Below are positions 11,626 to 50,381 of a DNA stretch of 64,000 bases, piece by piece. The notes under the pieces are model-generated. The model was not told the origin of the DNA, made no database searches, and saw only the letters and a program-made list of their open reading frames with translations. The stretch lies in the IMG/VR virus record IMGVR_UViG_3300028384_001500, positions 62,001-126,000 of that record; one strand, 5' to 3'. A program made the position numbers and the translations under genes. Numbering within the stretch: position 1 is the stretch's first letter; the number at the start of each line of letters is the position of its first letter.

Positions 11626-14073
11626 TCAAATAAGAAAGTCATTATAAGCTTCTGGCCATGGGACGTTGTTTGCTAGCGAATAGCTTTGCCATCTGAGCTT
11701 CCCGTCAATCACATACTTTACAATTTCATAAAGAGACAAGGCCCAACCGTATGTTTCAGGGTTATTCATTTCAGGTTGATCTTCATATTCTTGTAAGTAA
11801 GCAATTATTTCTGCCATATAGTCGTGAATATTATTAATTGTCCTATATCCTCTTTCGTATAATTTTACTATTTTTGCATGCTCTATTCCCATTTCAGATG
11901 CCGGCATCATAGCTTCCATCCATTGATCTTGAAAAATTTCTTGTAAATCAACGACACTATTTCGATCAACAAATATAGAGATATTTTCAGCTAGCCTTTT
12001 TGTCTTTCCTGCTTGGGCTTTATATGATTGAAAGTTTGGTCCTTTAATTAACGGATCTTCTCGCAACTTAAATATGACTGATGCAGCATTAACTCTAGGT
12101 GTTGTTCTAAAGTCTAGCATACCGTTTCTATAATTTTGTGGGTTTAATAAGATTTCTCTGTGTATTGCTCTTTCGTACACTTTGATTGGATAAATTGGAT
12201 CAAGATGTATTTTGCTGCCAAAATAATAAAACGAATTAAGTTCAGCAGCAGAATCAAGATATTTTAAAAATGTACTAGGTAATTTTTCTTCTATCATTGC
12301 AAACGTTTTGTTATCAGCATACGTCGCAAATGTACTTATTAGCTTATCATGTTTTCCTTGTATTTCGCCAAATTCGTTAGACACGACATTTCCTTGACCT
12401 GGTAGAGTACGCATTTGATAGTTAAAACTGCCGTGGAATTCTCTTAATTTTAAATCTTCAGGGCAATTTGGATGTGTTGTTAAGACAAGTGTATGCCGTC
12501 TAGCATTATCGGCGTCTCTTTGACTGTTAAAAAGTTCATATAACGCTGTTATATGTTCAGGTGTTAAGCCGGGGTGTCGAATAATTCTTGTAAAATAGTA
12601 GTCTCGAGGTGGATTAGGATCGTTCCATTCATTACCAGAAATTACGTTATTTGTGACAATATCTTCAACCATTTCATTGAATAGCTCAGGCGTAGGTTCT
12701 CGTTTATAAATTTGAATCCCATAGTACTGGTTCATATCCAAAGTGTTTGTTGTGTCAATAAAGTTATGTAATATTCCCGAAGGTATTTTTCCGCCATTTT
12801 TTGCCTTTTCTGATCTATACACTTTTGTCATAAAATCAGGAGGTAAAGGTAGAATTGACTTAATTAACGCGTCAAAAGGAACATGTTCTATTGCGACTGC
12901 TGCTACTTCTGGCCGTGCTGAATTTCTAAAACTTATCGGGTGTCTGTAAACTGCCCGCTCAGGATCTTTGACCATTTCAATAAAAATGTCAACGTTCGAA
13001 GAATATTGACATATACCTCTAACTTGCTCTGCAAATAAATTTAAATCTTCCGGAGAAGTAGCAGCTGCTCTTAAGTCTCTATATTGATCAAGCGTTAATG
13101 ACTTATAATAAGCAATTATATCTACTGTCTTTCTACTAGGTTTTTTAACATCAGCCTCAATCAAATCATAAAGTCTTTGTCCTATGTGTCTAATAATTGT
13201 TTCTTTTGATGCTGGTTTGTTGTCACCGTTAACTGTCGCATGCCCATCACTGCGCAATTCAACGTGATCACCCTGTTTGACAAAACTTAGACAAAATTTT
13301 CGCTCTGGAGCGCGTGGGTTATAGTCGCCAACACGAGTTAGATAATACATATGCAAGTTCATTTTTTTGTGATAGTTAAGGAACATATTTCCACTTCCAT
13401 CGACTGTTGTGCACCATGTCATATTACCTAGCTGTGCTTTATCAATAGGTGAGTTAGGGTTAAGATAATTATAGTTTGGCCCCATACGCCCTAATGATAT
13501 TGATCCTTTATAGGTTTTAGGATAAGCAACAAAGTAAGGATTAGAGCTAGATGGCATAGCAATAACTTCAAACTCTGATGTTTGACCATTAACACCGTCA
13601 GCGATTACTTGGTTAAGTACATCAGTTCTTTTACCTACTCCTGATCCACTTTCTATATATTCCATTGCTTCATTGTATGTTAAAGTTGTGTTGTCAGGTT
13701 GTACTACATCGATCTTTGGTAGAAGATCAATAAACTGATTTGCAGTCCCTCTAACAGGACGTGGCGGTAATTCACCTCGTCGAGCATTATTAATAATCTT
13801 ATTTAAGATATCTTTACCACCTTGGGCTATATCTCTAAGACTATGTCCTTGACCACCGTCATTAAGTGTATTGAAAAGTATTTTTGCCATGATCGGATCG
13901 TTAAACGGAGGTTTCCAGTCATTTCCAAAAACATACATTTTAAAGTCTTGATCACTAATAATTCCCCTTTGGATAAATTGATTAAATGACCTTTTCTTTA
14001 TTTCAGTAAGAAGACTAGCCTCTTTTAGATAATTTTCAATTATCAAAGACAGTTGTTTGCGTGTTACTTTCAC
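11626..14073 (-). CDS. Leader-bearing large protein with a WCT-motif domain and helical repeats
   Basis: MKVTRKQLSLIIENYLKEA leader (GTG start, GGAG RBS); TWCTT...NMFLNY; HPGLTPE and HPNCPED repeats. Confidence 0.7.
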   Translation of the reverse strand: MKVTRKQLSLIIENYLKEASLLTEIKKRSFNQFIQRGIISDQDFKMYVFGNDWKPPFNDPIMAKILFNTLNDGGQGHSLRDIAQGGKDILNKIINNARRGELPPRPVRGTANQFIDLLPKIDVVQPDNTTLTYNEAMEYIESGSGVGKRTDVLNQVIADGVNGQTSEFEVIAMPSSSNPYFVAYPKTYKGSISLGRMGPNYNYLNPNSPIDKAQLGNMTWCTTVDGSGNMFLNYHKKMNLHMYYLTRVGDYNPRAPERKFCLSFVKQGDHVELRSDGHATVNGDNKPASKETIIRHIGQRLYDLIEADVKKPSRKTVDIIAYYKSLTLDQYRDLRAAATSPEDLNLFAEQVRGICQYSSNVDIFIEMVKDPERAVYRHPISFRNSARPEVAAVAIEHVPFDALIKSILPLPPDFMTKVYRSEKAKNGGKIPSGILHNFIDTTNTLDMNQYYGIQIYKREPTPELFNEMVEDIVTNNVISGNEWNDPNPPRDYYFTRIIRHPGLTPEHITALYELFNSQRDADNARRHTLVLTTHPNCPEDLKLREFHGSFNYQMRTLPGQGNVVSNEFGEIQGKHDKLISTFATYADNKTFAMIEEKLPSTFLKYLDSAAELNSFYYFGSKIHLDPIYPIKVYERAIHREILLNPQNYRNGMLDFRTTPRVNAASVIFKLREDPLIKGPNFQSYKAQAGKTKRLAENISIFVDRNSVVDLQEIFQDQWMEAMMPASEMGIEHAKIVKLYERGYRTINNIHDYMAEIIAYLQEYEDQPEMNNPETYGWALSLYEIVKYVIDGKLRWQSYSLANNVPWPEAYNDFLI

Positions 14074-19559: not shown

Positions 19560-20642
19560 TTAAACACCAGTTACAACTTCTGTATAATCCATCAACTCAG
19601 CTGTATTGGGTATTAATTCAGACGGTTGTGTTGTTGGGTTTGCAGCTATTACTCTTAAATTCCAAAAAGATGATATCAAGCCTTGCCCTTTCCCAGCAAT
19701 ATAAGCAAGGTGTGTTGCAAACGTACCACAATTATATTCATCCATGACTGGAAGCAACGTATATAGGTGACATTTGTCTTTTATGCTTAATCCGTAATCA
19801 ATTGCCGACTGGACATAATTTACGTCTGGGCAAATGTAAAGTTCTCCTGCATGCAATGACCCTAATTTTTTCTTTGCTAGCTGTCCTAACCTTCTAGCCT
19901 CTTTTTGCGTCACAGTTATCATTCCTGTGCCTGTAAATTTTTTAAATGACTTAACGGGGTCAAACATTAGATCTGGGTCATAGTCAACAATGTTTGCCTT
20001 TCCTAACGATGCATACCTAACTTTTCCACCGGTTGCTAAAGATTTCTTAATAAGCTTAGGCGTGTATTTCCCTTGGAGGACGTATTTGTCAATAACTCCT
20101 CTTAGTTTATCTAGACTTGATTTAGAACATTGTCCGCTATATCTACCAAAGTCAAAATAGTGCGCACTACCATCACCTGCTATCAATATAATACCACCGT
20201 GGCCTTGAGGGAATAAATACTCTAAAGCTTGTTTTTCCATGCCTGTCAATCCTAGTGATTTAGATAAGGGTTTAGACCCAGTCCAGTGGCACATTATGAC
20301 ACATCCGTTTGCTGAGCTTGATCCAGTAGTTGATTTAGGCTTTGGTTTTTCGCTCTTTTTACTCTCTTCTTCGTCATCTCCAAAACTAGGTAAGTACTTT
20401 CCTAATCCAAAATATTCAGTATCAGCTTCGTATTCTTTTCCAAATTGTCTATATGCTTTTGCTACATAAGCGTTGTTTTTGGTTTTTTCGCTCGGCGGAT
20501 CTAATTCTAATCGATGTGCATCTTCTGGATATGTATCGTTCAACCACTGTCTAAACGCATCTGCTTCTTTTTTGTTTGTCGGCGCTGCTTCGTTTAGATA
20601 ATTTTCAATTATAATTTTTAAATCGCTTTTTTTAATTTTCAT
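19560..20642 (-). CDS. Leader-bearing protein with a permuted papain-like (His...Cys) domain
   Basis: MKIKKSDLKIIIENYLNEA; PQGHGGIILI...FDFGRY; YTLLP...YNCGTF. Confidence 0.55.
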   Translation of the reverse strand: MKIKKSDLKIIIENYLNEAAPTNKKEADAFRQWLNDTYPEDAHRLELDPPSEKTKNNAYVAKAYRQFGKEYEADTEYFGLGKYLPSFGDDEEESKKSEKPKPKSTTGSSSANGCVIMCHWTGSKPLSKSLGLTGMEKQALEYLFPQGHGGIILIAGDGSAHYFDFGRYSGQCSKSSLDKLRGVIDKYVLQGKYTPKLIKKSLATGGKVRYASLGKANIVDYDPDLMFDPVKSFKKFTGTGMITVTQKEARRLGQLAKKKLGSLHAGELYICPDVNYVQSAIDYGLSIKDKCHLYTLLPVMDEYNCGTFATHLAYIAGKGQGLISSFWNLRVIAANPTTQPSELIPNTAELMDYTEVVTGV

Positions 20643-20663: not shown

Positions 20664-21290
20664 TTACCAGTTTTGGTATACTTTGTATATATTAATATCG
20701 TTACTTAAATATCCAGGCGAAACAACATTTTCTTCTAATTTTAAACTATTTAATTTATAACCATTTGGAATGATTTTACCAATTTTAACAGCTAAAGTTA
20801 AATCTTTAATTTTTTGGGGTTCTTCTAAATCTAAATTGGCATATTCCAGAGATTTATAAGCTAATTCTGAGCAATACTGTGCTGAACTAGACCAGCTAAG
20901 TCGGCTGTCGTAAGGTTTTCCTACTTGTGACTTTAAGTACCTTTTTACTTTTGCGTGATTTTTTTCTGTGATATCATCATGACGATAAACTACAAATCTT
21001 TTTCCTGTCCCTCTTCTATTAATATATTTTGTCAAGCTTATTTTTTTAACTGGGCCGTGCGCTTCATAAACGTAAAATTTGTTATTTTCTTTTACGACAA
21101 CCCCTACATGGTTGTAAGGACTAAAAGTCGCAGCTTGAATTGCGAGTGCCTGACTGCGACCTACTTCTGTTTGGAAAATTAAATCTCCAGTCTCGGCAAT
21201 ATTTTCATAGTCCTGTTGGTCATATGTAAGTCTTAAAGCTTCACAAGATACAAATAGTCCTGCGATCGCGGCGTATATATATTTTTTCAT
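20664..21290 (-). CDS. YiiX/YaeF-like permuted papain-like amidase (C92), lipoprotein
   Basis: Lipobox FVSC; GDLIFQ, SPYNHVG, VYEA, KPYD...YCSEL. Confidence 0.85.
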   Translation of the reverse strand: MKKYIYAAIAGLFVSCEALRLTYDQQDYENIAETGDLIFQTEVGRSQALAIQAATFSPYNHVGVVVKENNKFYVYEAHGPVKKISLTKYINRRGTGKRFVVYRHDDITEKNHAKVKRYLKSQVGKPYDSRLSWSSSAQYCSELAYKSLEYANLDLEEPQKIKDLTLAVKIGKIIPNGYKLNSLKLEENVVSPGYLSNDINIYKVYQNW

Positions 21291-23511: not shown

Positions 23512-24552
23512 TTATTTTAAAGTTTCTTTTGCTAAGTTTACAGCGTGAGGTGGAAATTGAAAAAGTTTTTTGTCAATTGATCCTGGCATTTTTCCTTTTT
23601 TTGCAAGATGTAGTAGTTTGTATCCTAAACTAGAACAATTATCTGATCCATCACTTTTAGTAACTGTATCGTCCCCAGTGAAAGTATCAATCATACCCCT
23701 TAAAGAACTTGCCAAGTCTCCAGCAGATGATGCCGGAACTAATGAGTACTTATTGCATTTATAACTAGCTGTATGACCAATTACTTTATTGATAAATTTG
23801 CAGTCATTAATAATTGCATAATCTTCATAGTCTGATGTTCTACTAAGAATGTTTTCAACTTCGCCTTCTTTGAATAAATAGTGTGTACCATCTTTTGATT
23901 TTACCAAAGATGCTTCCGGCCCGGGTAAATCTTTTTTAACTAAAGATCCAACAGCATATACACCTACTGATCCACCAATTGCATTTAAAATATTTTCAAA
24001 AGCACTTTTATTTTTTTGTTGACATTCCGCATGCCCTCCATCCTCTTTAGAATAGACACCAAAATCTACGCTAAAAGGAATTCTTGTCCTAGGATGAATA
24101 TAAATCACCTTAATATGTCCTTCAGGTATTGCGTCTAATACTTTTTTCTTTGCTGACTCAGGAACCATACCAATAAACAAGTCTGATACAGGCTTGGAGG
24201 TTGTATTAATTATGATTGCAGGATACCCTACATCTTTTTCATATGCATACTTTCTACCTGTCTGCTTTTTTGATATCATTTTTTCAACTTCTGCATTGAT
24301 TTTTTGATGTACGTCTTTATAAGCAGACTTAATTTTTTCTAAACTTAAAGGCTTTTCTTTACTCACGTTTGAAACATCAGTACCTGAAATTTTTGCTTGC
24401 GCAGGCCAAGAAGTAAGAAATATACCCTTGCTATCTTTATACCCTTTAATATTAAAGTTTGAAAATTTTATAGAAAATTCTTTTTTTTCATTTTCGTTTT
24501 CAAACAAATATTGCTTAATTAAATTTTTTAAGTTATTTTCAGATATTAACAT
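23512..24552 (-). CDS. Leader-bearing protein with a permuted papain-like domain (paralogue of 19560..20642)
   Basis: MLISENNLKNLIKQYLFEN; PEGHIKVIYI...VDFGVY; YSLVP...DNCSSL. Confidence 0.55.
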   Translation of the reverse strand: MLISENNLKNLIKQYLFENENEKKEFSIKFSNFNIKGYKDSKGIFLTSWPAQAKISGTDVSNVSKEKPLSLEKIKSAYKDVHQKINAEVEKMISKKQTGRKYAYEKDVGYPAIIINTTSKPVSDLFIGMVPESAKKKVLDAIPEGHIKVIYIHPRTRIPFSVDFGVYSKEDGGHAECQQKNKSAFENILNAIGGSVGVYAVGSLVKKDLPGPEASLVKSKDGTHYLFKEGEVENILSRTSDYEDYAIINDCKFINKVIGHTASYKCNKYSLVPASSAGDLASSLRGMIDTFTGDDTVTKSDGSDNCSSLGYKLLHLAKKGKMPGSIDKKLFQFPPHAVNLAKETLK

Positions 24553-24562
24553 TATCGCTTCC

Positions 24563-25162
24563 TTAAAAAGAAGACTTCATAGATGCATCACCAGATGACT
24601 TTGCTGATTTTGCAATTGAATCTGTTGACTTTCTTAAAGAGTCAGCAGATGAATCCATTGCAGCACTTAATATGTCACCAAAAGAAAACTTTTTCTGTTT
24701 TTCTTTATCCATTGTAAAAGTTTTACCCATTGTAGAAGCTTTTGGTCCCGCAACAACTCTAAATTTGTCACCACCAGCTTTCTGATAAAGATACGGATCT
24801 TGCTTTCTAGATCCTACTTCACCCATTTCTGTCATACCGCTTGACCAAAATTTATCTAACCCCTTCCAAATAAAGTAGTCTTTTGATTTTAAATCTTTTC
24901 CTGTTCTTTTTCCAATTGAATTCATTACATTCTTAACTTGATTATTAGTTCCAGGTGCAGCATCACCAACACCATATTGGTTCCCGCCAAAGTGAATTTT
25001 AAGTGCTTCTTTGTTTGATTTATCAGCAACAAAGTGTCCTGAATTTGGTAACATGTCGTCACCAAACATTTTCTTTGCCATTTGTTCAAAAGCGTTTTCG
25101 TTGATTGCGTAACTAATAGCTTCGTTAATAAGTCGTCTAAGCTGCATTCTAGAAAGTTTCAT
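24563..25162 (-). CDS. Leader-bearing hypothetical protein
   Basis: Start revised to 25162 (GGAG RBS); MKLSRMQLRRLINEAISYAINEN. Confidence 0.7.
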   Translation of the reverse strand: MKLSRMQLRRLINEAISYAINENAFEQMAKKMFGDDMLPNSGHFVADKSNKEALKIHFGGNQYGVGDAAPGTNNQVKNVMNSIGKRTGKDLKSKDYFIWKGLDKFWSSGMTEMGEVGSRKQDPYLYQKAGGDKFRVVAGPKASTMGKTFTMDKEKQKKFSFGDILSAAMDSSADSLRKSTDSIAKSAKSSGDASMKSSF

Positions 25163-25184
25163 ATTATACTCCAAATAAAATAAA

Positions 25185-25689: not shown

Positions 25690-26676
25690 TTATTGTCTCC
25701 CCATAAATTGATTATGTTCTTGTGTTAGTTCGTTAATTTCGCTTAAAGCATTTTCCCATAGCTTTGTAAATACTGTGTCGCCACCTGGGTTTTCTGTACC
25801 ATTAATGTCTTCCCGGCGTGATTGATATATACTGTCATTTGGGTGATAATCAAAGATATCATTCTTGGGTTCTGGCCAGTAAAGATTCGTACCTCTAGAT
25901 GTGTGACCACCTTTACCATCAGGTACTCGGAAAGTTTTAACGTAATGCATATCTGGTTTGCCGAAATTAATACGTGTACTTGCTTCAGGTAAAACTTTAA
26001 GTACTTCTCGTGCCATGTATGCAGCAAGCAGATTATCAGCTGCAGGTTGAATTTGCATATCTTGACGTTGAGCAATAAAACCTAACAGATCTTTTAAATT
26101 AAGACGCATTAGATAGAATGACGTCATTGCTTTTGGAAGTATCATTCGAGCGTCCATCATAGATACAGCTTTTGAGTCTGTCATATCTGCGTAGAGCTGT
26201 TTTGACTCACGTACGAGACGGCGCCACCTATCAGCAAACTCAGGACTATTTTGTACTGATTCAGGAATAACTGCATCGTCATGGCGCAAGTCGCGGTCAC
26301 CTGTACATTGTGCTGCAAAAGAACCAGCACGATGGCGAATAATATGAGTAACTTCTTGAAATGAAAGCCCTGACAATTTAAAGGTAAAACCTAGACATTC
26401 CATAGGGGTTGGTAATGCACGAAAATTAAGTACATCTTCAAGATTTTCTGACAACTCTTTTAAAGAAGCTGTTGCCGGGTTTGTGTCATCGTGATGATCA
26501 GCCCAAGTAGCTTTTACATATTGCCATGCAACATTAAGCGCTTGAGATCGAGTTGGTGCATCTACAAGTTCTACTTTAAGTGCTTTAAGGTTATTATGAA
26601 ATGTTGTTTTTGGTTCTTCACCAAACTTTAAATCCATTGGTAAAGTAATAGGAATTAAATTTAAGTTTTGAGGCAT
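25690..26676 (-). CDS. thyX: Flavin-dependent thymidylate synthase-like protein (divergent)
   Basis: THIIRHRAGSFAAQC (RHRx7S with Cys), DARMILP, NLKDLLGFIAQR. Confidence 0.75.
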   Translation of the reverse strand: MPQNLNLIPITLPMDLKFGEEPKTTFHNNLKALKVELVDAPTRSQALNVAWQYVKATWADHHDDTNPATASLKELSENLEDVLNFRALPTPMECLGFTFKLSGLSFQEVTHIIRHRAGSFAAQCTGDRDLRHDDAVIPESVQNSPEFADRWRRLVRESKQLYADMTDSKAVSMMDARMILPKAMTSFYLMRLNLKDLLGFIAQRQDMQIQPAADNLLAAYMAREVLKVLPEASTRINFGKPDMHYVKTFRVPDGKGGHTSRGTNLYWPEPKNDIFDYHPNDSIYQSRREDINGTENPGGDTVFTKLWENALSEINELTQEHNQFMGRQ

Positions 26677-26707: not shown

Positions 26708-26746
26708 ATAATATAGCAAAAAAAGCACTATTACAAAATAGTGCTT
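26708..26746 (-). terminator. Terminator (stem 26723-26732/26737-26746) overlapping promoter TTGTAA-17-TATTAT for thyX
   Basis: 10-bp stem with a T7 run; -35 at 26731-26736, -10 at 26708-26713. Confidence 0.6.
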
Positions 26747-26768: not shown

Positions 26769-26999
26769 TTATTTTATTAAGTTAACTGATGATGCCATTT
26801 CCGGGTCAAAATCCATCCTTAACTCAATAAGCGGATTAAATTTTACACCGCTTCTTTCTACAATAAGCGCACCTTGCGGTTTTACTAACTCTCCAGAAAT
26901 TTCTATTCCGTCAAAATCAATCTCTGTTTCTTTTTGATACTTTACACTTCTGTCATTTTCTTGACTATACGCTAATGCTATCCCTAATATTAAAAACAT
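26769..26999 (-). CDS. cglF: CglF/GltF-like adventurous gliding motility protein
   Basis: Signal peptide; ETEIDFDGIEISGELVKPQG...FNPLIELRMDFDPEMASSV matches the recalled myxobacterial CglF pattern; AGGAGG RBS. Confidence 0.75.
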   Translation of the reverse strand: MFLILGIALAYSQENDRSVKYQKETEIDFDGIEISGELVKPQGALIVERSGVKFNPLIELRMDFDPEMASSVNLIK

Positions 27000-27000
27000 T

Positions 27001-27954
27001 TTACCCTCCTAATAATAAATTTAATTCTTTTAAAGTTGACATTGCCTGATAATAGTTTTCATAATGAAAAATATTTTCATTGTTTAAATGTTCATTGTAT
27101 GCTTTTTTAGGAACCAAACACTTAATACCGTGTTTTGCATAGTCTTCAGCATGTTTTGGCGCGTCGTCAATGGCAAACTTAATTGCACCTTGATCATAGT
27201 ATTTTGACTTAGCACACCAACGAAATTTTTCAGCTGAAAAACTAATTGCATCACACGGAATGTTTTGTTGGCAAATCCAAAAATACGTATCATACAAGCA
27301 TTGCAACTCTTCTTCAGGGCGTGCAGTCAAAAGATGAATCCAGTATCCTCGGTGCTTTAATTGCCATAGAAGTTCTAAATTATCTGTGTCAATTGAAAGT
27401 TTTGCAAATCCTTCGTCATCTAAGAACATTTTAAAGACTGCTTCAGAGTTAAGATTGATTTTTGACAATGCTGAAATAAAGTAGTATTCTTTTGAGTTGA
27501 CATCAGCATCTACTTTAAATTTTTCTTTAAGCCAGTCAGAAAAACCTTGACGGAAGTTTGCCAGCACGTCATCAATATCTACAATTGCAACCGGTTGAAG
27601 ATCTTTCCGTTTTCTATTTTGCAATTCACGGTGTTTGTTAAGGTAGATATCTTTTTTATTAAAAGCTTTTTCAAACTCTTCTGGAGTTATTTCCCATGTG
27701 TTTAATGTAGCCATCATATATCTAATGACGTCAACTGTTTCATACAAAACAGTTTTTCTATTTGCTAAAGGTTCTGTATGTGAATGATGATTTTTATAGT
27801 GGGTTGCGTTAACTAATGCACTTAATTCAGCATGCGCACATAAGACATTTTCTTGCGTAATTTTCTCTTTAAGTTCACGTGATAATTGATCTGATCTTCC
27901 TACAATTTTATTGTTGTATACCTTTTGAAGGTTCATCATGCGTTTGAATGACAA
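27001..27954 (-). CDS. Degenerate MazG-like domain fused to a HAD 5'(3')-deoxyribonucleotidase
   Basis: HAELSAL...YETVDVIRY; IVDIDDVL, LLTAR, AIDDAP. Confidence 0.75.
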   Translation of the reverse strand: MSFKRMMNLQKVYNNKIVGRSDQLSRELKEKITQENVLCAHAELSALVNATHYKNHHSHTEPLANRKTVLYETVDVIRYMMATLNTWEITPEEFEKAFNKKDIYLNKHRELQNRKRKDLQPVAIVDIDDVLANFRQGFSDWLKEKFKVDADVNSKEYYFISALSKINLNSEAVFKMFLDDEGFAKLSIDTDNLELLWQLKHRGYWIHLLTARPEEELQCLYDTYFWICQQNIPCDAISFSAEKFRWCAKSKYYDQGAIKFAIDDAPKHAEDYAKHGIKCLVPKKAYNEHLNNENIFHYENYYQAMSTLKELNLLLGG

Positions 27955-34421: not shown

Positions 34422-35791
34422 GATACCACCTTATTATACATTGCCATAACCAAACTGTTTTCCTCAGGTGTTGATCCTGTTGTAAAATATAAATGAGAGC
34501 CAGTGACAGAATAGTCCTGGTAATCTGCTTTGTCGTTAGGGACCTGTAATTGACCGTTAACAAAAACACTAACTTCGTCAGAAGAAAAAGGTGTATTTGC
34601 AAACGTAAAATAAGTATTCTCTCCGTTTGCATTACCTCCTAAGACTTCATTAAAAACCATTTCTTTTTCAACTTTTATTGTAAAACTTCCACCTGCTCCA
34701 GCGTCAGAAGAAGTTAAACCGGTACCAACATCAATTACCCTTTCATTATCTAAAGATCCGGTTGCAGATAAAACTAAGTATGATGCCCCGGCGTCACCGT
34801 CACCGCTTGAAGAAGATCCTGAGTTGTAAGTTACTACGCTTACTACGTCGGAAGGGTTAAGATCAAAACCAAACTTAATTTCATTTGAAGTTGGTGTAAA
34901 GTAGTCAACATCAGCTGTGCCTACTTCTGAATCTGAACCTGAAAGAAGTAATTGACCGTTAACAAAAACATCAATCAGCGTTTCATCAAAAGCGCTGTCT
35001 TGAAAGTTTGAATTAGGTACAGAAAATGCAGATCCGGAAGTTGTTAATGAAGTAACAATATAGTCTCTTTTTTCTCTTCCACCACCCCCACCGCCTGATC
35101 CACCTGAGGCAGCTGCATCAGAAACAACCTCGTCAAGCATTTTACCAACATAGATAAATGCTCGTGCAAATGCAGGTATTTTTGACGCATTATAATCTTG
35201 TACAAAAAGTACTCCGTTGTACGTGTCTACTTGCCAATCAATATCATCAAGCAGCGGTATTTCTGTTCCTGCATTTCCCGACCCGTCGTCTTCGTATATT
35301 TTAATAACATAAGGGTTAACTAGCTCTCTTGAATAAAAGGGTGGAATTAACTGGACTTTGCCTAACGTTTCATGAACAATTTTGTCATTATCAAAGTTAC
35401 TGTCTCCTGCTTTAGAGTTGTCTGTGTCAGTTTCATATGTGGATTTAAATTTAAAAGCATAAGCATGAGGCCCAGAGACTTGAGAAGATTCTCCACTGTC
35501 ACTACCGGCGCCACCGCCTGAATCATTTGCGTCATATGTTGAACCAGGAATTGTTTCTAAAACAAACTCAACGTATTCGACAGTGCTGCTTTGTACTGTA
35601 TTTAAAGTCAACGTAGGCGTTTGTGGTATTGCTTCACCAAACAAAAGATCTGCAGATGTTTGTACAGTTGAACCAATTGACTCATTAACATCAAGGTTAA
35701 GATTTGAAGTATGTGCTTTACCTAATAGTTTTTTCTGAGAAAAGAGCGTTGCTGTTTCGTTAGTTTTTAATGCCATTACGCAACGCTCCAT
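34418..35791 (-). CDS. Fibre-associated structural protein with two VFVNGQ domains
   Basis: WQVDTYNGVLF, YVG, two C-terminal VFVNGQL...DY modules. Confidence 0.65.
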   Translation of the reverse strand: MERCVMALKTNETATLFSQKKLLGKAHTSNLNLDVNESIGSTVQTSADLLFGEAIPQTPTLTLNTVQSSTVEYVEFVLETIPGSTYDANDSGGGAGSDSGESSQVSGPHAYAFKFKSTYETDTDNSKAGDSNFDNDKIVHETLGKVQLIPPFYSRELVNPYVIKIYEDDGSGNAGTEIPLLDDIDWQVDTYNGVLFVQDYNASKIPAFARAFIYVGKMLDEVVSDAAASGGSGGGGGGREKRDYIVTSLTTSGSAFSVPNSNFQDSAFDETLIDVFVNGQLLLSGSDSEVGTADVDYFTPTSNEIKFGFDLNPSDVVSVVTYNSGSSSSGDGDAGASYLVLSATGSLDNERVIDVGTGLTSSDAGAGGSFTIKVEKEMVFNEVLGGNANGENTYFTFANTPFSSDEVSVFVNGQLQVPNDKADYQDYSVTGSHLYFTTGSTPEENSLVMAMYNKVVS

Positions 35792-38700
35792 CTGATGTCT
35801 ATTTGACTAACATATCCAGTCCAGTCTTCGCTAGCTGTAATTCTTACAACAATTGATTCTGCACCTGAGGTTTGACCATTTATGCTAAACGTTCCAAAGT
35901 TAACTTCGTTTGCAGCTCCTCCACTATCAATTGTCGCGTCTAGCGTTCCTGAAAGACAACCGTCGCCTTCTTGACCTGATACAGACCCTGCCCCTGAGGT
36001 GAATGCAACTGCTAAATCAACAAATTCGTTTTTGCCCGGGCATTTTAATTCAATTGTGCAATTTTTGTTTGCACCTTTTCCTGTTGATCGATCAACAATT
36101 GTTGCATCACCATAAATTGTTATACCAAAACGTGCCAAATCGTTATTAGAGCTATTTTCAAAATATCTAAAATACTCACGCGTTGATTCTGTTAGTGAGC
36201 TGTAATTAACATTATTATCAGGACCTTCAAAAACACCTCCATCAGTATGATTTCTAAAGTCACCAGAGTTACCACCTTTAAGCGGAGATATTAGAATTCC
36301 GTCATAAACCATTAAACCTTTGGCAAATCCTGCATAACTACCAGCGTCATTTATGGATATCTGAGAGTCCCATGCGTTTCCTGCCAATGTTATACTATTT
36401 TGTGTTGCAAAAGTTCCACTTTGAATTCGATATTGTTCACCATTAAAATATTCGTTGTCATGAGTAGAATTATCGCTAGCTGAATATACTAACAGATTTG
36501 TTGCAGTTTGTGTTGCAATTGTATGATTGTTTTTAAGTGGATGTTTAAACGTTAAAGCCCCACCACAATTTAGCAATGAAGTTCCTGTATCTGAAGTAAA
36601 TGCGCCTGATAGAGAAGTTGATTGACTAAATTGTATAGATGCAGTTATGTGCGTGACTTCGTTTTGAGCGTCAGCGTTTGTGTTTAAAGACTGTAAAGGA
36701 GCAGCACCATCATTTTCAGTCCTGTCAGCAGTTAAACCGTCCCCTCTCTGGACAATCGATACTGCATTTGCATTTGTAAGACTAGTCAATCTAATTGCAT
36801 CGCTATCGTTTGAGTATACATTTTTATAAATGTTACTTATTCGTGTTTCAATACTTCCTGTTGGGTTGACAAAGTATTTGACACCGCTCAAGTAAAATAC
36901 ATCATCATCACCAAATTGTGTTATTCCTGTTCCTGCATCTGTGATATTATTATTTTGACTTTCGCTGTCATTTACCCACTCAATATAGTTTGTGGTTCTA
37001 GTTCCCCAACTTCCTACATGTTTGACACGTGCATAATTCCATCCGTCTCTTTGATCATCAGTATGTACACGATATTTCCCTGTTCTTTGTATCTCTAAAT
37101 AATAAGGAACATCATTATCGTATTCAGCTGGTCTCCAAACACTTAAATCAAAAAACCCGCTACTACCTGTAAATGTTGTACCTGTTCCGCTTCCTGGTTC
37201 ACCAGCCCCAACATTGTTGTATGTTCCTGTTAAGTCAACTGTATGTAAGTCTGTTCCATTTACTTCTAGTACTAGTGAACCGCTATTGGCGTCTGAAAAA
37301 GAATTTGTAACATAATCTGGTAAAACTGCTGAGACATCTTCATTTAAGTCTCCCTCTATAGTAGTCGTCTTATCAAAAACAGCTGTTCTAATATTATTAC
37401 TTGACGTTAAAACCTGATATGTAGCATTTAGGCCTACTGAACTAAATCCTGCTGTTGTTCCTACATTTGTATAGCCTGTGATTGATTTTGTCGTACCAAA
37501 TGACAAAGCAGCCGTTACACCGGTATCGTTACAATCTATGTCGTCTAGGTCAGGTATTGCTGTGATTGTTCCTGTTCCTGCACCAAAAGTGACGTCAATT
37601 TGACTTATATAACCTGTCCAAGAAGTATCAGCCTCTATTCTTATTCCAATATACTCGTCATCAAGTATACCTACTGTGCCTAATGTAATGTAGTTAAGTG
37701 CATCTAAACTATTGTCAAAAGACAAGGATCCGTTTGCTGTGTGAGCTCCGTCATTATCATCATATGCGTCTAATACAAACTCTGTTGCTAAGTCCAACCA
37801 ACCGGTTTCTCTGGTTCCGTTATCTGGAAATTTAACAAATACTCTAATTCTTCCGGTGTTTAACGAGGTTGATGCTGGCACAATTGTTGTACCCGACCCT
37901 TGTATATTTAAGGTTAGATCATATTGAGTTGATCCTGTTTCATTTCTGAACCACCTATAAAACGTTCTTTGACCGGTTTCACCGCTATAATCCGGATTAC
38001 CAGATGGACCATTGCTAAAAGTACTAAAGTCACCGCTGTTTAATGTATTTAAAGGCGATTTAAGTCTTTGATTAAAAAACTGCAATCCGTTAGAATGACC
38101 ACCATTTGATGCCGTCATAAAGACTTCACTATCCCAAATATTACCGGCATCAACTAAAGAAGCTTGTGTATTATAAGATCCGGAAATTATTCTAAAATTT
38201 TCTCTTCTAAATGTTTCTCTTTGATTTGTCGAATTATTAGATCGATTATAAATTAGTATCCCTTCATCTGTTGCTTGCCCTGCATTAGAAAGATTAGATT
38301 TAAAAGGATGAGTAACATTTACACCAGCAGTGATTGACCCACTCAACATTTGTGTTGCAGTTATTGTAGAAGAACCTGTGATATGTAAATTTTTTGTATG
38401 ATCTTCACCTGCAATAGTATCAATTGTTGGCTTTGTTTGGCTGGATATAGAAAAAGAAACACCTGAGTTTAGAGAACCGGCATTAGAAGTTGTAAATGTT
38501 ATGTTGTTTGTGTCGTACACATTTCTATAAACATTATCTGCCCTTACACGATATTCTGCGCTTCCTCCAGTAAAATACTCTACACCTGACAAATGCACTG
38601 TTCCTGTGCCGGTAAATTCTAATTCATTACCAGAAGTTGACAACGCATCTGAATTTGTATCATTTAACCATTCTACATAGTTTGTTTCGATTGTTGTTGT

Positions 38701-39645
38701 ACCGTAAACATGAAGTACACGAGCATAATTCCAACCTTGTCTTTGATCAGATGAAACAACTCGATACCCGCCTGTTCTATGTTTAAAGTTAGGAAATGAT
38801 GATCCGTTATCAAGAGTACCATCAGTTGCTACTGATAAAGATGTAAAGCAAGATCCCGTTGTGTTTGTATTGCCGCTTCCGAAAGAAGTAAGATCTGTTG
38901 TGTGTACAACAGCTCCGTTGATTTCAAGCCTTAATTCGCCTTGATCAGCGTTGCCAAAAGCATTAGCAGCGTAATTGTTACCTGTTCCAGAAGGATCTTG
39001 GGTCACGTCTTCGTTAAGCGTCCCTTCTATCGTTCTTAAAGATCCAAAAGCGCCCACCCTAATATTATTACCTGATGAACCGGGCGAATAAGTATCATTT
39101 ACGTCTAATGCTCCAAAACCTGCTGCAGTTCCGACTGAATAATAAGGTGTTAATTCACTTTCTAAATCGTTATCAGCTCCAAATGAAAGCTCAACTGTAC
39201 TTGCGCCTGTGTTGTCATTATCAATATCGTCTAAATCAGGTGCGGGAGCAGGTGCCAACAAAGAAAGTATTTCATTAAATCTATCAATTGCAATTCCTAG
39301 ACGTGTTGCGGGTGTAAAATCTTTAAACAAACCGTCTGTATAGTCACCATCTTCAGCAATACCAATTGATGCTGTTAGAGCTGCCCTTCCTCCAGTTTCA
39401 TCGTTTAATATAAAACCGTCTGAGGCCGCAATAGTAGAAACGGTGGAAACATCAACAGATCCTGAACTAACTGTTATACTTCCACCGGCACCTGCTGTAC
39501 CAATAGTAAAGTTTCCATTTCCATCATCTTGTACAGTTACATTGCTTCCAGCGACAATACTTCCAGATAAAAATCCTCCGTATCCATCAGCAATTTGCAG
39601 CGACCCTAAGGACCCTGACGACTCATTAACTCTTAATGCTGTCAT
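35776..39645 (-). CDS. Large fibre or structural protein made of two tandem homologous units of about 560 aa
   Basis: PDLDDID, LEI/VNG, DQRxGWNYARV, LSGVxYF and YRxFxN each occur twice. Confidence 0.7.
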   Translation of the reverse strand: MTALRVNESSGSLGSLQIADGYGGFLSGSIVAGSNVTVQDDGNGNFTIGTAGAGGSITVSSGSVDVSTVSTIAASDGFILNDETGGRAALTASIGIAEDGDYTDGLFKDFTPATRLGIAIDRFNEILSLLAPAPAPDLDDIDNDNTGASTVELSFGADNDLESELTPYYSVGTAAGFGALDVNDTYSPGSSGNNIRVGAFGSLRTIEGTLNEDVTQDPSGTGNNYAANAFGNADQGELRLEINGAVVHTTDLTSFGSGNTNTTGSCFTSLSVATDGTLDNGSSFPNFKHRTGGYRVVSSDQRQGWNYARVLHVYGTTTIETNYVEWLNDTNSDALSTSGNELEFTGTGTVHLSGVEYFTGGSAEYRVRADNVYRNVYDTNNITFTTSNAGSLNSGVSFSISSQTKPTIDTIAGEDHTKNLHITGSSTITATQMLSGSITAGVNVTHPFKSNLSNAGQATDEGILIYNRSNNSTNQRETFRRENFRIISGSYNTQASLVDAGNIWDSEVFMTASNGGHSNGLQFFNQRLKSPLNTLNSGDFSTFSNGPSGNPDYSGETGQRTFYRWFRNETGSTQYDLTLNIQGSGTTIVPASTSLNTGRIRVFVKFPDNGTRETGWLDLATEFVLDAYDDNDGAHTANGSLSFDNSLDALNYITLGTVGILDDEYIGIRIEADTSWTGYISQIDVTFGAGTGTITAIPDLDDIDCNDTGVTAALSFGTTKSITGYTNVGTTAGFSSVGLNATYQVLTSSNNIRTAVFDKTTTIEGDLNEDVSAVLPDYVTNSFSDANSGSLVLEVNGTDLHTVDLTGTYNNVGAGEPGSGTGTTFTGSSGFFDLSVWRPAEYDNDVPYYLEIQRTGKYRVHTDDQRDGWNYARVKHVGSWGTRTTNYIEWVNDSESQNNNITDAGTGITQFGDDDVFYLSGVKYFVNPTGSIETRISNIYKNVYSNDSDAIRLTSLTNANAVSIVQRGDGLTADRTENDGAAPLQSLNTNADAQNEVTHITASIQFSQSTSLSGAFTSDTGTSLLNCGGALTFKHPLKNNHTIATQTATNLLVYSASDNSTHDNEYFNGEQYRIQSGTFATQNSITLAGNAWDSQISINDAGSYAGFAKGLMVYDGILISPLKGGNSGDFRNHTDGGVFEGPDNNVNYSSLTESTREYFRYFENSSNNDLARFGITIYGDATIVDRSTGKGANKNCTIELKCPGKNEFVDLAVAFTSGAGSVSGQEGDGCLSGTLDATIDSGGAANEVNFGTFSINGQTSGAESIVVRITASEDWTGYVSQIDIRWSVA

Positions 39646-47876: not shown

Positions 47877-50381
47877 TCAATCAATAAGATTAATAATTTT
47901 TTGGCTTTTAATAATTTTTCTACGAATATTAGACTCCCACAATAAATCATCTAAAAACAAATTTTCTTTTAAATTTTCAGATTTACCCATAATAAAGTCA
48001 TATATTTTAATAATTTGATTAGGGGATAAATGACTTCCTGTTTTTGCACCAATAGCCTTCATTGTTTGTGGATCTTTTCTCATTTGATTATAAAAGTCTA
48101 ACCATGTCTTGTAATTTCCGTCGTTAACTTTACCTGCTGATGCTAACTCTTCAAACCCAGACTTGACTTTATTTCCGGCGTCTCCTGTTTTTGAAATATA
48201 GTATTCCCAAGACATTTTATTTTTTGGCTCACTTTCTTTTGTTGCTGATATAGTTTCTTTACCTTTATTTTTGATTTTTTTATTTTCTTCCCCTCCGGAA
48301 GGTGGTTTTACTGATATCTCTTTCTCTGCTGCTTTTCTTAACTTTTTAAATTCTGGATACCACGTTTCAGCATTTAAAAATCCTTTATCAAACAAACTTC
48401 TTAGTTTTTTGGCAATTTTTGCATTTTCTCCAGTAGCACTCGATAGTTTTTCACCATTTAGCATCATTATTCTTTCAATTGCTAGTAGGTTAAATAAAGC
48501 ACTGCGCCTTTTCTCATCAATATCTTTTGGATTAAGACCCTTAAAGTCTTTTTTTGCTGCAGCGTCAATAAAATCTTGTGCCCATTCATTTTCTTCATGC
48601 CACTTGGTAAACATTCCCGTATCAAGAACGCCAACTTTATCGGCTGCTTGCCGTCCAACACTGACGAATAAATCATTAGTATCTACTGTCATAAAGTCAT
48701 TAAATGGTTTTCCGATAAGAAAATAACCAGCTCCACCAGCTGCCGTCGCAGCAATTGTCGCGCCAAAAGCGACTCCTAAAGTCAATGCAAGGCCAGCACC
48801 AGCTGGTGCAGCTATAGCAAGTGTACCAAATCCAATTGTCATGTTTCCAGCTGCTATGGCTAACGCGTTATAAAACTCCTCATCATTGTATTCCTCGTTT
48901 GTAAAAGCGTTATACAGTTCGTAAAAACCAAATGCTAAGACGATTGCTGGGCCTAGCGCTTTTGCGAGACCGGTTACAAACTTTCCACTTGCGCTGACTG
49001 CCACTTCTGTAGATTCTTGTCCTGCATTTTTAGCTACTATTTCTGCAACTTCTTCACCCGGCAACGATCCCAGAAGTCCGTGAGCTCCTTGCTTTGCGAC
49101 TTCTTCAGAAATCTCACCACTACCGGCATTTACAATTTGTTGTGTCAATGCTGTCTCTAACTGAGGAGCTCCTTTAGCTATTTGTGCACCTTTTTCTATA
49201 GCGCCTTCAGCAAAATCTTTCACCACAAGCTCTGTGGTTCCAGAAGCTGTTTGTATTGCTGTTTTACTTGTGGTTTGCGCGCCTGTCTTTGTTAATCCTG
49301 TTTCAGCAGCTTGTGCTCCTGTTTTTGCTAATCCTGTTTCAGCAGCAGCTGATGCTTTCACGCCTAATTGTTTTCCTAGCTCTGCAAGAGCATCATCAGA
49401 CATACCAGCAGCTTGAGCTTGTGCCATTTTTTTAAGTGTCTCTTGGGAAACATCTTTAAAACCTTGCTCTGAAAGCGACTGGGAAATATTTTTAATAATT
49501 GCTTTTTCTAATTCTGGTGAATTTGCAAGTTTAGATGCACCTTTTTTAAAATATTCTTCTCCCAATTCGCTTGTCATTGCTGCAACTAAGTCATCAGGGG
49601 TCGACGATGCAGATGACGAAGCTACACTGGCTAGCCTTTGAGTACCTTGTGATTCAGCGGCTGGTGTTGTTGTTAAAGCAGTTGTCATTTTTTCTGTTGC
49701 AGCAACTTGGGAGGCGGGAGGAGGAGCTATAGCTTTAGTTGCATTAGTATGAACAGCTAGCGATGATTCTGGTGCTGCCGTATCAATTATTTTTTCCATA
49801 GGCAGTAATTTTTCAGCATTTTGAATAGCTTTTTTTGCTGCTTGTGATGTTGAATTAGATGACACTACAGCTGGAGTTCCTTTAGAAGTTTGAGCTACAA
49901 TTTTACCAGTATCAGTTGTTATTTTGTACTCTGTCCCACGCAAACCATTCATATATAGAACACTAGATCTAGAAATTGCGTCTTTAGATACTTTAATAGT
50001 TTCTGCAAAACCGGTTTTTGTTAAGACCTTACCTGTTTTGACACTAACTCTTGCTAAAACTGCTTCTCCTCCATCTACACCAATAACACGGTAAAGACCT
50101 TTACACCCTTTAGGTATTGTGTTGTTTGTAAAAATAGCTTTAGAAGTTGCTTTTGCGACACCCTTTACCGTATTAGGGCTTCTAATGACCTTACCATTCG
50201 TTGATACCATGATAAAATCACCCATTGCATCAGCTGATCCGGTAAGCAAAGACTCGTTTAAAATTGAATTATACCATCTTTGCTGACGCTTAATATTTTC
50301 ATGAATAATATTTTTTCCTTTTTCTCTTCGTATAGACTCTTCTAATAGTTTTCTAATCTGTAATCTTTTTAACTTTTTCAT
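47877..50381 (-). CDS. Leader-bearing large protein with an A/T/S/K-rich linker and a hydrophobic helical hairpin; possible ejected membrane protein
   Basis: MKKLKRLQIRKLLEES; hydrophobic ALGPAIVLAFGFY and GFGTLAIAAPAGAGLALTLGVAFGATIAATAAGGAGYFL. Confidence 0.6.
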   Translation of the reverse strand: MKKLKRLQIRKLLEESIRREKGKNIIHENIKRQQRWYNSILNESLLTGSADAMGDFIMVSTNGKVIRSPNTVKGVAKATSKAIFTNNTIPKGCKGLYRVIGVDGGEAVLARVSVKTGKVLTKTGFAETIKVSKDAISRSSVLYMNGLRGTEYKITTDTGKIVAQTSKGTPAVVSSNSTSQAAKKAIQNAEKLLPMEKIIDTAAPESSLAVHTNATKAIAPPPASQVAATEKMTTALTTTPAAESQGTQRLASVASSSASSTPDDLVAAMTSELGEEYFKKGASKLANSPELEKAIIKNISQSLSEQGFKDVSQETLKKMAQAQAAGMSDDALAELGKQLGVKASAAAETGLAKTGAQAAETGLTKTGAQTTSKTAIQTASGTTELVVKDFAEGAIEKGAQIAKGAPQLETALTQQIVNAGSGEISEEVAKQGAHGLLGSLPGEEVAEIVAKNAGQESTEVAVSASGKFVTGLAKALGPAIVLAFGFYELYNAFTNEEYNDEEFYNALAIAAGNMTIGFGTLAIAAPAGAGLALTLGVAFGATIAATAAGGAGYFLIGKPFNDFMTVDTNDLFVSVGRQAADKVGVLDTGMFTKWHEENEWAQDFIDAAAKKDFKGLNPKDIDEKRRSALFNLLAIERIMMLNGEKLSSATGENAKIAKKLRSLFDKGFLNAETWYPEFKKLRKAAEKEISVKPPSGGEENKKIKNKGKETISATKESEPKNKMSWEYYISKTGDAGNKVKSGFEELASAGKVNDGNYKTWLDFYNQMRKDPQTMKAIGAKTGSHLSPNQIIKIYDFIMGKSENLKENLFLDDLLWESNIRRKIIKSQKIINLID

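What the first reader, a model, noticed from the sequence alone, without database searches (positions are those of the whole stretch)
26769..26999. Phage-encoded CglF/GltF gliding-motility homologue
Seen: a secreted 76-aa protein with IDFDGIEISGELVKPQG...FNPLIELRMDF, a strong RBS and a terminator right after it. Known: CglF/GltF is a small envelope component of the Agl-Glt gliding and predation machinery of Myxococcota and related bacteria. Inference: it indicates the host group. It may jam or remodel the Glt outer-membrane complex, for superinfection exclusion if Glt is the receptor or to alter motility of infected cells. I know of no described phage cglF. The match is from recall and needs confirmation.
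Basis: partly seen in the sequence, partly recalled or inferred. Interest (0 to 1): 0.8.

Follow-up and report, generated by a model that had tools for sequence, protein, structure and literature searches.

The report
Jumbo-phage copy of gliding protein GltF
A 237-kb marine phage carries its own well-conserved copy of GltF/CglF, the smallest subunit of the envelope-spanning gliding (Agl-Glt) machine of myxobacteria; about ninety other uncultured phages do too, which hints at who their hosts are and that these phages tamper with, or keep running, that machine.

Summary
ORF 26769-26999 (minus strand, 76 aa) is real. Its Shine-Dalgarno overlaps the end of the upstream gene, and a 10-bp hairpin terminator follows it. 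The score (46.8 bits) is below the equivalog cutoff of 90. Cellular orthologues inside complete gltA/B-C-D-E-F-G-H clusters also score only 49-56 bits, so the model is narrow. The contig is an IMG/VR jumbo myovirus, with tail sheath, T4 gp13/gp15 and baseplate genes, UvsX and gp32. At least 92 IMG/VR contigs encode relatives, and none of the 80 examined has another glt gene within 10 kb. No GenBank phage record has a relative and no paper describes one. The phage gene has phage-like codon GC. Eleven of 11 differences from a sister phage are synonymous. It keeps the residues that are invariant in cellular GltF, in both published interface segments (GltG TonB-like domain, GltC). It is an accessory cassette, present at a conserved junction in 14 of 46 syntenic phages. 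Whether it sustains or jams the host machine is unresolved; I favour substitution. The host (marine Myxococcota-like) is only suggested: an AU test does not reject a single viral clade.

The parts
26769..26999 (-). gltF/cglF-family gene, 76 aa including signal-like N-terminus; stop codon at 26769-26771
   Evidence: ORF. NCBIfam NF033764 gliding_CglF, E=2.3e-12, profile positions 25-86 of 88. 149 homologous clusters. 11 of 11 differences from the L002-L004 copy are synonymous.
26961..26999 (-). Codons 1-13: short signal-peptide-like segment (Met, 9 hydrophobic residues, A-Y-S, then mature Gln)
   Evidence: Read from the sequence. It aligns with the AxA|Q sites of cellular homologues P0072 and P0120, which carry full signal peptides. 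Export was not tested.
26880..26933 (-). Residues 23-40 (KETEIDFDGIEISGELVK): most conserved block; inferred beta-strand that pairs with the GltG TonB-like C-terminal domain
   Evidence: T25, E26, I27, D28, F29 and G36 are invariant or nearly so in both 61 viral and 73 cellular sequences. The mapping to the GltF strand 94-111 of the published AlphaFold model (PMC11761067) counts from the C-terminus through the ungapped HMM match. It is an inference.
26772..26816 (-). Residues 62-76 (MDFDPEMASSVNLIK): conserved C-terminal segment; inferred helix that inserts into the GltC crevice
   Evidence: D63, F64, E67, S71, V72 and K76 are conserved in both viral and cellular sets. A helix at the equivalent place appears in the model of a natural fusion. 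The mapping to GltF helix 133-147 of PMC11761067 is an inference.
27004..27010 (-). Shine-Dalgarno AGGAGGG, formed by the last codons of the upstream gene; upstream stop TAA at 27001-27003
   Evidence: Read. The arrangement implies translational coupling and co-transcription with the 317-aa gene.
26713..26746 (-). Intrinsic terminator: 10-bp stem, 4-nt loop, T-run; ends the transcription unit after gltF
   Evidence: four terminator-like sites in 4 kb, against 2.1 expected from shuffles.
27001..27954 (-). Upstream 317-aa gene (HAD-type DxDD motif, nucleotidase-like by eye; no Pfam hit on record); conserved partner of the junction where gltF sits
   Evidence: Homologues were found in 46 viral loci. 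In 14 of them gltF lies between this gene and thyX.
25690..26676 (-). thyX (flavin-dependent thymidylate synthase), the downstream side of the junction
   Evidence: Pfam Thy1 on record. 75-89% identity in syntenic phages.

Best explanation
This is a host-derived, long-resident phage copy of gltF/cglF. GltF is the small, intrinsically disordered periplasmic adaptor of the Agl-Glt (or paralogous Nfs-type) trans-envelope machine.

Shown: it is homologous to GltF. It is on a phage. It is under purifying selection. It keeps the residues that are invariant in cells. It stands alone, with no other glt gene nearby.

Inferred mechanism:
1. The gene is co-transcribed with nucleotide-metabolism genes as the last gene of its unit.
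2. The protein is exported by its short signal peptide.
3. In the periplasm it takes the GltF slot of the host machine. The conserved TEIDF...GELVKP strand pairs with the TonB-like C-terminal domain of GltG. The C-terminal helix binds GltC, and the stretch between touches GltD.

I commit to the reading that it acts as a working substitute. It would keep the motor coupled to the outer-membrane platform once host protein synthesis fails. This is the logic of cyanophage psbA, applied to what I assume is the most labile subunit of the machine. The sign of the effect, sustaining or jamming, is the least secure step.
For: Homology:
- NF033764, E=2.3e-12.
- Cellular relatives at 55-69% identity lie in the order OMP-OMP-GltC-GltD-GltE-GltF-GltG-CglE. 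NCBIfam names the neighbours GltC (239 bits), GltE (101), GltG (274) and CglE (94, above its cutoff).

Phage identity:
- The contig is IMG/VR UViG 3300028384_001500, 236,652 bp.
- The window holds UvsX, a gp32-like SSB, DnaB, an endolysin-like gene and a T4-type baseplate gene.
- Tail sheath, T4 gp13 and gp15 lie just outside it.

Resident and selected:
- GC3 is 25%, like the neighbouring phage genes, against 55% in the cellular gene.
- 11 synonymous and 0 non-synonymous differences from a sister phage.

Same constraints as in cells:
- Per-column entropies of 61 viral and 73 cellular sequences correlate at r=0.76. Y21, T25, E26, F29, G36, P41, R49, F54 and R61 are invariant in both sets.
- Both interface segments of the published model are retained.

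Stand-alone:
- None of 80 viral loci has a GltC, GltD, GltE or GltG homologue within 10 kb. Nor do the window or the two flanking loci L170 and L171.

Disordered alone:
- AF2 pLDDT is 56, matching what is published for GltF.

The pairing of a CglF-like segment with a TonB-like domain recurs in nature:
- P0266 carries a VWA domain, a CglF-like segment and an AgmX/PglI TonB-like domain in one chain. The C-terminal domain of its model matches TonB and FusB structures.

GltF is essential for gliding and is needed for GltD to localise to focal adhesions (PMC3169522).
Against:
- The signal-like segment is short and has no basic residue, so export could be inefficient.
- Some positions invariant in cells are relaxed in the viral set: E37 (49% against 100%), L57 (61% against 99%) and M68 (65% against 99%). 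This could mean altered binding.
- Excess of a two-sided adaptor can uncouple its partners even when both interfaces are intact. Retained interfaces therefore do not exclude interference.
- The host is not identified, and the phage GC (35%) is 10 points or more below that of any cellular lineage carrying a close GltF.
- The cellular clusters have the contiguous A-H order of the nfs operon. The host machine may not be a gliding machine at all.
Confidence: 0.42

Rival explanations
1. Interference or superinfection exclusion. Phage GltF is made in excess and saturates GltG-CTD and GltC separately, or binds more tightly than host GltF. This uncouples the Agl motor from the outer-membrane platform. 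Gliding stops, the surface adhesin or receptor is no longer exposed, and later phages cannot adsorb or use the energised machine for entry.
For: - It is a small exported protein, expressed with replication-phase genes rather than with virion or lysis genes.
- It is an accessory cassette with its own terminator at a variable junction, like many phage exclusion 'morons'.
- Viral copies are relaxed at a few positions that are invariant in cells (E37, L57, M68).
- GltF is the bridging adaptor in the published model, so it is a sensitive point of the machine.
- From my own knowledge: phages are known to shut down type IV pili with small proteins (Tip, Aqs1).
Against: - A dedicated blocker would be expected to lose or change one of the two interfaces. 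Both are kept under near-cellular constraint in 61 diverse viral sequences.
- Nothing shows that the Glt machine is the receptor.
- Nothing here tests adsorption.
Confidence: 0.3
2. Retargeted adaptor. The phage protein keeps the GltF fold-upon-binding motif but acts on another TonB/TolA-like C-terminal domain of the host, such as Tol-Pal, TonB or an Nfs-like paralogue. It would act on envelope integrity, uptake or lysis timing rather than on gliding.
For: - CglF-like segments occur outside glt clusters, fused to VWA proteins and TonB-like domains. The C-terminal domain of the modelled fusion resembles TonB, FusB and TolA.
- Relatives of this phage carry several periplasm-acting peptidoglycan enzymes near gltF: Peptidase_C92, TseH-like, YkuD and Tlde1-like.
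- Glt paralogues have non-motility roles (nfs).
Against: - Near-identical constraint to cellular GltF along the whole mature length argues for the same set of partners.
- The closest relatives are all GltF proteins in glt clusters.
Confidence: 0.13
3. Not a functional phage gene: an assembly chimera, a cellular contaminant, or a decaying passenger picked up from a host.
For: - It is the only glt gene present.
- No RNA run could be listed for it.
Against: - The same gene sits at the same junction in 14 related viral contigs from independent samples.
- Its codon GC matches the phage.
- 11 synonymous and 0 non-synonymous differences.
- 92 IMG/VR contigs carry relatives.
- It has an intact start, Shine-Dalgarno and terminator.
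Confidence: 0.02

Closest known systems
GltF / CglF of Myxococcus xanthus (MXAN_4868; NCBIfam NF033764)
   Same: - It is a small protein with an N-terminal signal sequence and no Pfam domain.
- It gives a significant profile match over 62 of 88 positions.
- It shares the conserved core Y..TEIDF..G.LVKP.G...R...FNPLI.LR.DF..EM..SV..IK with cellular orthologues.
- It is disordered on its own (PMC11761067).
   Different: - It is encoded by a phage and stands alone, not between gltE and gltG.
- It is 76 aa rather than 86-91.
- Its signal segment is 13 residues with no basic residue.
- It scores 46.8 bits against an equivalog cutoff of 90, though cellular orthologues from marine MAGs also score only 49-56.
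NfsF of the Nfs spore-coat machine (paralogue of Glt)
   Same: The cellular clusters nearest to the phage gene are contiguous in A-B-C-D-E-F-G-H order, like nfsA-H. The phage protein could equally be called an NfsF-like subunit.
   Different: No Nfs-specific model was available to tell the two apart. The named NCBIfam hits are to the Glt models.
Host-machine subunits carried by phages as auxiliary genes (cyanophage psbA/D1 is the textbook case; from my own knowledge)
   Same: - A single subunit of a large host complex, copied into a lytic phage.
- It is ameliorated to phage composition, kept under purifying selection, and patchily present among related phages.
   Different: - The complex is a motility or envelope-transport machine, not a metabolic one.
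- GltF turnover has not been measured, so the 'labile subunit' argument is an assumption.
Small phage proteins that shut down host surface motility for superinfection exclusion (Tip of D3112, Aqs1 of DMS3, acting on type IV pili; from my own knowledge)
   Same: A small accessory phage protein aimed at a motility apparatus.
   Different: Those proteins are unrelated to any pilus subunit and are cytoplasmic inhibitors of PilB. This one is a homologue of a subunit and is probably periplasmic.
Disordered TonB-box / TolA-binding peptides of TonB-dependent receptors, colicins and filamentous-phage g3p
   Same: A short disordered segment thought to bind a TonB/TolA-type C-terminal domain by strand addition (PMC11761067). 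The TonB-like fold of the partner domain was seen in a natural fusion.
   Different: There is no sequence relation. The GltF contact is predicted, not solved.

Membership tests
CglF/GltF (NCBIfam NF033764, equivalog) | Significant match to the family profile over most of its length | tested here: met
   E=2.3e-12, 46.8 bits; residues 12-73 match profile positions 25-86 of 88.
CglF/GltF (NCBIfam NF033764, equivalog) | Score at or above the curated equivalog cutoff (90 bits) | tested here: not met
   46.8 bits. Cellular proteins P0072, P0120 and P0121 also reach only 49.4, 53.6 and 55.6 bits. P0072 and P0120 lie between gltE and gltG; P0121 is a library representative whose genomic context was not examined. 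The cutoff therefore separates close relatives of Myxococcus from the rest, not phage copies from cellular ones.
CglF/GltF | Residues invariant in cellular orthologues are present | tested here: met
   Y21, T25, E26, I27, D28, F29, G36, E37, K40, P41, R49, F54, N55, P56, I58, R61, E67 and S71 are all present in the window protein.
CglF/GltF | Small exported protein with a type I signal peptide | tested here: inconclusive
   There is a 13-residue hydrophobic N-terminus with small residues at -3 and -1, aligned to the cellular AxA|Q sites. It is short and uncharged. No predictor or export assay was available.
CglF/GltF | Gene located in a glt cluster (between gltE and gltG) | tested here: not met
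   It is flanked by a nucleotidase-like gene and thyX. No GltC, GltD, GltE or GltG homologue was found in the 64-kb window, in L170/L171, or within 10 kb in 80 viral loci.
CglF/GltF | Needed for gliding; localises to focal adhesions; binds GltG, GltC and GltD | not testable with these tools
   Known for M. xanthus only (PMC3169522, PMC11761067).
Phage auxiliary (host-derived accessory) gene | Host homologue embedded among phage genes on a verified viral genome | tested here: met
   IMG/VR UViG. Phage replication genes lie on both sides. Tail sheath, gp13 and gp15 are on the same contig.
Phage auxiliary (host-derived accessory) gene | Variable presence among related phages; composition ameliorated; purifying selection | tested here: met
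   14 of 46 syntenic loci have it at the junction, and two other contigs carry it elsewhere. GC3 is 25% against 55% in the cellular gene. 11 synonymous and 0 non-synonymous differences.
Phage auxiliary (host-derived accessory) gene | Expressed during infection | not testable with these tools
   No RNA run could be listed. Only DNA holders with a word share of 0.14 or less were found.
Superinfection-exclusion protein | Blocks adsorption or entry of a second phage | not testable with these tools
   The receptor and the host are unknown.

The most novel reading that the evidence does not exclude
Marine jumbo phages carry gltF as a tool to take control of the host's TonB-like Agl-Glt motor. They would either switch gliding or predation off to exclude rivals, or drive it for their own benefit. 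If so, this is the first phage gene known to copy a subunit of a bacterial gliding machine. It would also mark a large, uncultured group of ocean jumbo phages as viruses of marine Myxococcota-like predators.
Probability: 0.3. Interest if true: 0.78.

Novelty: new variant of a known kind. Interest (0 to 1): 0.62.

Why it matters
GltF is the least understood subunit of the myxobacterial focal-adhesion machine. It has no solved structure and no biochemistry, only genetics and a 2025 AlphaFold model that makes it the bridge between the motor side (GltG, GltD) and the outer-membrane side (GltC).

Out of roughly 17 subunits, phages have picked exactly this one, in at least 92 viral contigs. That is independent evolutionary evidence that it is a control point or the limiting part.

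The viral copies are a natural mutational scan. They show which residues cannot change.

The gene is also one of very few host clues for a widespread family of uncultured marine jumbo myoviruses. It points to Glt/Nfs-bearing bacteria (marine Myxococcota, possibly Bdellovibrionota), whose viruses are almost unknown.

Finally, it extends the idea of phage auxiliary genes from metabolism to a motility or envelope-transport machine.

Tried and rejected
- **Pfam and PHROGs on the protein:** nothing significant.
- **Megablast of 20 kb, and tblastn of the protein, against 50,697 GenBank phage records:** no match.
- **AF2 of the protein alone:** pLDDT 56, pTM 0.17. That is too poor for a fold search, so none was run on it.
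- **Retrieving a named M. xanthus CglF for a direct pairwise alignment:** the profile search returned only unnamed or 'hypothetical' proteins, and Pathak & Wall 2012 is not held. The mapping onto the published interface residues therefore rests on the HMM coordinates.
- **A block alignment joining natural fusions, GltF sequences and GltG C-terminal domains (A3):** misaligned, so dropped. The reduced alignment A4 gave a moderate model whose contacts I could not inspect.
- **'Several independent transfers between host and phage':** the quick tree needs 3 label changes. The AU test does not reject a single viral clade (p=0.32), so I do not claim this.
- **'gltF is core to this phage family':** rejected. 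32 of 46 syntenic loci show no gltF match. In most of these the junction is visibly empty; in two the locus or the thyX match is cut short, so the junction cannot be read.
- **RNA evidence:** no run could be listed, and read laying was not used.
- **Host from phage relatives:** the closest isolated phages share 37% identity or less (Microcystis phage Mel-JY01, huge phage LR756508, Flavobacterium phages), which is not informative.

Full report
**1. The observation**

The ORF is at 26769-26999 on the minus strand, starts with ATG and encodes 76 aa. It contains the quoted strings. No longer reading is possible, because the ORF list already starts at the first start codon after a stop.

Read on the minus strand, the start region is AGGAGGG-TAA-A-ATG. 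The Shine-Dalgarno is made of the last two glycine codons of the upstream 317-aa gene (27001-27954). That gene's stop is one base from the ATG, so the two genes are co-transcribed and translationally coupled.

Twenty-two bases after the stop lies a perfect 10-bp hairpin with a T-run (26746-26723). Then comes thyX with its own Shine-Dalgarno. gltF is therefore the last gene of its transcription unit.

**2. Identity**

NCBIfam gives one hit: NF033764 'adventurous gliding motility protein CglF', E=2.3e-12, 46.8 bits, residues 12-73 on profile positions 25-86 of 88. Pfam and PHROGs give nothing.

The score is below the curated equivalog cutoff of 90. To see what that means I looked at cellular relatives.
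- Two homologues with full signal peptides (P0120, P0072) lie on cellular contigs, after a ~1030-1076-aa TPR protein and a ~504-520-aa TPR protein and before an FHA protein.
- A scan of one genome per species found 124 cellular relatives. I examined the best 80. They are MAGs labelled mostly Myxococcota, Deltaproteobacteria or 'proteobacterium'.
- All share the order two OMPs, GltC, GltD, GltE, GltF, GltG, CglE.
- On locus L008, NCBIfam names the neighbours OMP_myx_plus (twice), GltC (239 bits), GltE (101), GltG (274, with the AgmX/PglI TonB-like tail) and CglE (94, above its cutoff of 70).
- Cellular relatives score only 49-56 bits on NF033764: P0072 and P0120, which lie in such clusters, and the library representative P0121, whose context I did not check.

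The cutoff failure therefore reflects a model built on close relatives of Myxococcus. It is not something peculiar to the phage protein.

**3. It is a phage**

- The window's contig is JGI 3300028384 Ga0307030_1000001, 236,652 bp, listed in IMG/VR.
- All genes in the window are on one strand, and GC is 35%.
- The window holds DnaE, class I/II RNR, DnaB, a UvsX-like recombinase, an exonuclease, a gp32-like SSB, an endolysin-like gene, many nucleotide-salvage genes and a T4-type baseplate gene.
- Just past the right edge, on the same contig, are two tail-sheath genes, T4 gp15 and gp13.
- The 1289-aa ORF matches only 'huge phage' records.
- The closest isolated phages share 37% identity or less.

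**4. Distribution**

- The word-based protein search found 149 clusters, nearly all 74-78 aa and unnamed, from marine samples.
- The exhaustive profile search found 1084 representatives at E<=1e-3.
- In IMG/VR, 92 contigs encode relatives. Several exceed 180 kb (up to 316 kb). GC is mostly 34-45%.
- None of the 80 loci kept has a GltC, GltD, GltE or GltG homologue within 10 kb.
- The ESM Atlas neighbours are clusters that are 100% viral 'hypothetical protein'.
- No GenBank phage record has a homologue, and I found no paper that mentions one.

**5. Status of the gene in the phage**

- GC is 32.9% and GC3 24.7%. This matches the neighbours (GC3 19-26%) and contrasts with the cellular gene in L008 (GC3 55%).
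- Against the copy in three sister contigs, all 11 nucleotide differences are synonymous.
- Twelve viral loci share the order 317-aa gene, gltF, thyX, deoxyribosyltransferase. ThyX is 75-89% identical across them, GltF only 46-72%.
- A wider scan with the 317-aa protein found 46 syntenic viral loci. gltF sits at the junction in 14. In most of the other 32 the 317-aa gene runs straight into thyX.
- At least two of those 32 contigs carry gltF at another place.
- Other lineages have gltF in different neighbourhoods. One copy lies two genes (about 1 kb) upstream of a terminase gene.

It is therefore an accessory cassette, not a core gene.

**6. What constrains it**

I aligned 61 distinct viral and 73 distinct cellular sequences over the mature 58 residues.
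- Per-column entropies correlate at r=0.76.
- The same residues are invariant in both sets: Y21, T25, E26, F29, G36, P41, R49, F54 and R61. I27, D28, N55 and others are nearly so.
- A few positions fixed in cells are looser in viruses (E37, L57, M68).

The published AlphaFold model of the machine makes GltF a bridge. A strand (94-111 in their numbering) adds to the sheet of the GltG TonB-like domain. A C-terminal helix (133-147) sits in a GltC crevice. The chain touches GltD in between. The rest is disordered (PMC11761067).

Counting from the C-terminus through the ungapped HMM match, those two elements fall on residues 23-40 and 62-76 of the phage protein. These are its two most conserved blocks. 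This mapping is an inference.

Alone, the phage protein models as disordered (pLDDT 56).

As an aside, some large proteins carry a CglF-like segment fused after a VWA domain. In P0266 an AgmX/PglI TonB-like domain follows it. A model of that part reaches pLDDT 73, and its C-terminal domain matches FusB and TonB. This shows that the two modules travel together, though I could not inspect contacts.

**7. Mechanism**

GltF is essential for gliding in M. xanthus, sits at focal adhesions, and is needed for GltD to localise there (PMC3169522).

A phage copy that keeps both interfaces most simply takes the same slot. I favour substitution, meaning it keeps the machine coupled when host synthesis stops. 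A dedicated blocker should lose one interface, and none of 61 viral lineages has.

It stays alive for three reasons: excess adaptor can uncouple partners, the cassette looks like a moron, and a few positions are relaxed.

A third option is retargeting to another TonB/TolA-like domain.

The cellular clusters are contiguous like nfsA-H. The host machine may therefore not be for gliding.

**8. Host**

In a quick tree the window's clade sits in a well-supported set (SH-aLRT 98) with four cellular sequences. These come from ~45% GC marine MAGs, two of them labelled Myxococcota. They are the most similar cellular copies, at 60-69% identity.

The alignment has only 58 columns, though, and an AU test does not reject a tree with all viral copies together (p=0.32). 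I therefore treat 'marine Myxococcota-like, Glt/Nfs-bearing host' as a lead. I do not claim repeated transfer.

**9. Verdict**

The identity and the phage origin are confirmed. The functional reading is open. This is a known family in a new setting: viral, stand-alone, with a trimmed signal peptide, widespread in uncultured marine jumbo phages, and not described in the collections and papers I could search.

Noticed in passing
P0266 (636 aa), P0238, P0252, P0253; also P0161, P0165, P0174, P0211: CglF-like segments occur inside large proteins. Four are VIT/VWA 'marine proteobacterial sortase target'-like proteins with the CglF-like segment near the C-terminus. In P0266 an AgmX/PglI TonB-like domain follows it. 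This is a Rosetta-stone hint that the GltF motif and TonB-like domains work together outside glt clusters.
   Followed up: partly
window 19560-20642 and 20664-21290 (-); L002 8905-9411 and 11795-12607: A few kb downstream of gltF the phage encodes a TseH-like protein (a faint Pfam hit) and a Peptidase_C92 protein. Sister phages have a YkuD L,D-transpeptidase and a Tlde1-like gene (also a faint hit) there instead. This looks like a variable set of peptidoglycan-acting enzymes, possibly an envelope-remodelling region.
   Followed up: no
L002 5400-6365, L003 3408-4373, L004 2614-3579: In three sister contigs whose GltF is identical in protein sequence, a 321-aa gene on the opposite strand is inserted between gltF and thyX, where the window has only the terminator. 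The junction is an insertion hot spot.
   Followed up: no
L170 2179-5325 and 5348-8314 (same contig, just beyond window position 64000): There are two adjacent, very long tail-sheath paralogues (1048 and 988 aa), followed by a T4-type baseplate gene that lies in the window at 62822-63625.
   Followed up: no
window 35776-39645, 52972-56580, 56890-60426, 47877-50381, 11626-14073 (-): Five ORFs of 815-1289 aa have no Pfam or PHROG match. The 1289-aa ORF matches only unannotated 'huge phage' records (LR756500-LR756508) at 26-31% identity.
   Followed up: partly
window 2442-3119 (-); L171 14601-14966 and 19387-20606: The phage carries an Fe/Mn superoxide dismutase (C-terminal domain hit). Further along the contig are a pterin-4a-carbinolamine dehydratase and a Cpn60/GroEL chaperonin. 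These are further host-like auxiliary genes.
   Followed up: no
L015, L021, L025, L031, L039, L041, L055, L085 and others: Many MAG contigs with complete glt clusters and 58-70% GC are labelled 'Enterobacterales', 'Enterobacteriaceae' or even 'Klebsiella pneumoniae' in their record titles. These labels look wrong, because the loci are myxobacterial in content.
   Followed up: no
L005-L089, last 105 residues of the gene after gltF: The TonB-like C-terminal domain of GltG is about 75-95% identical across all these lineages. That is far more conserved than GltF itself. One GltF variant could therefore fit many hosts.
   Followed up: partly
window 23512-24552 and 24563-25174 (-): Two adjacent unknown proteins (346 and 203 aa) begin with similar N-terminal helices (…LKNLIKQYL… and …LRRLINEAI…). 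No family match is on record for them.
   Followed up: no
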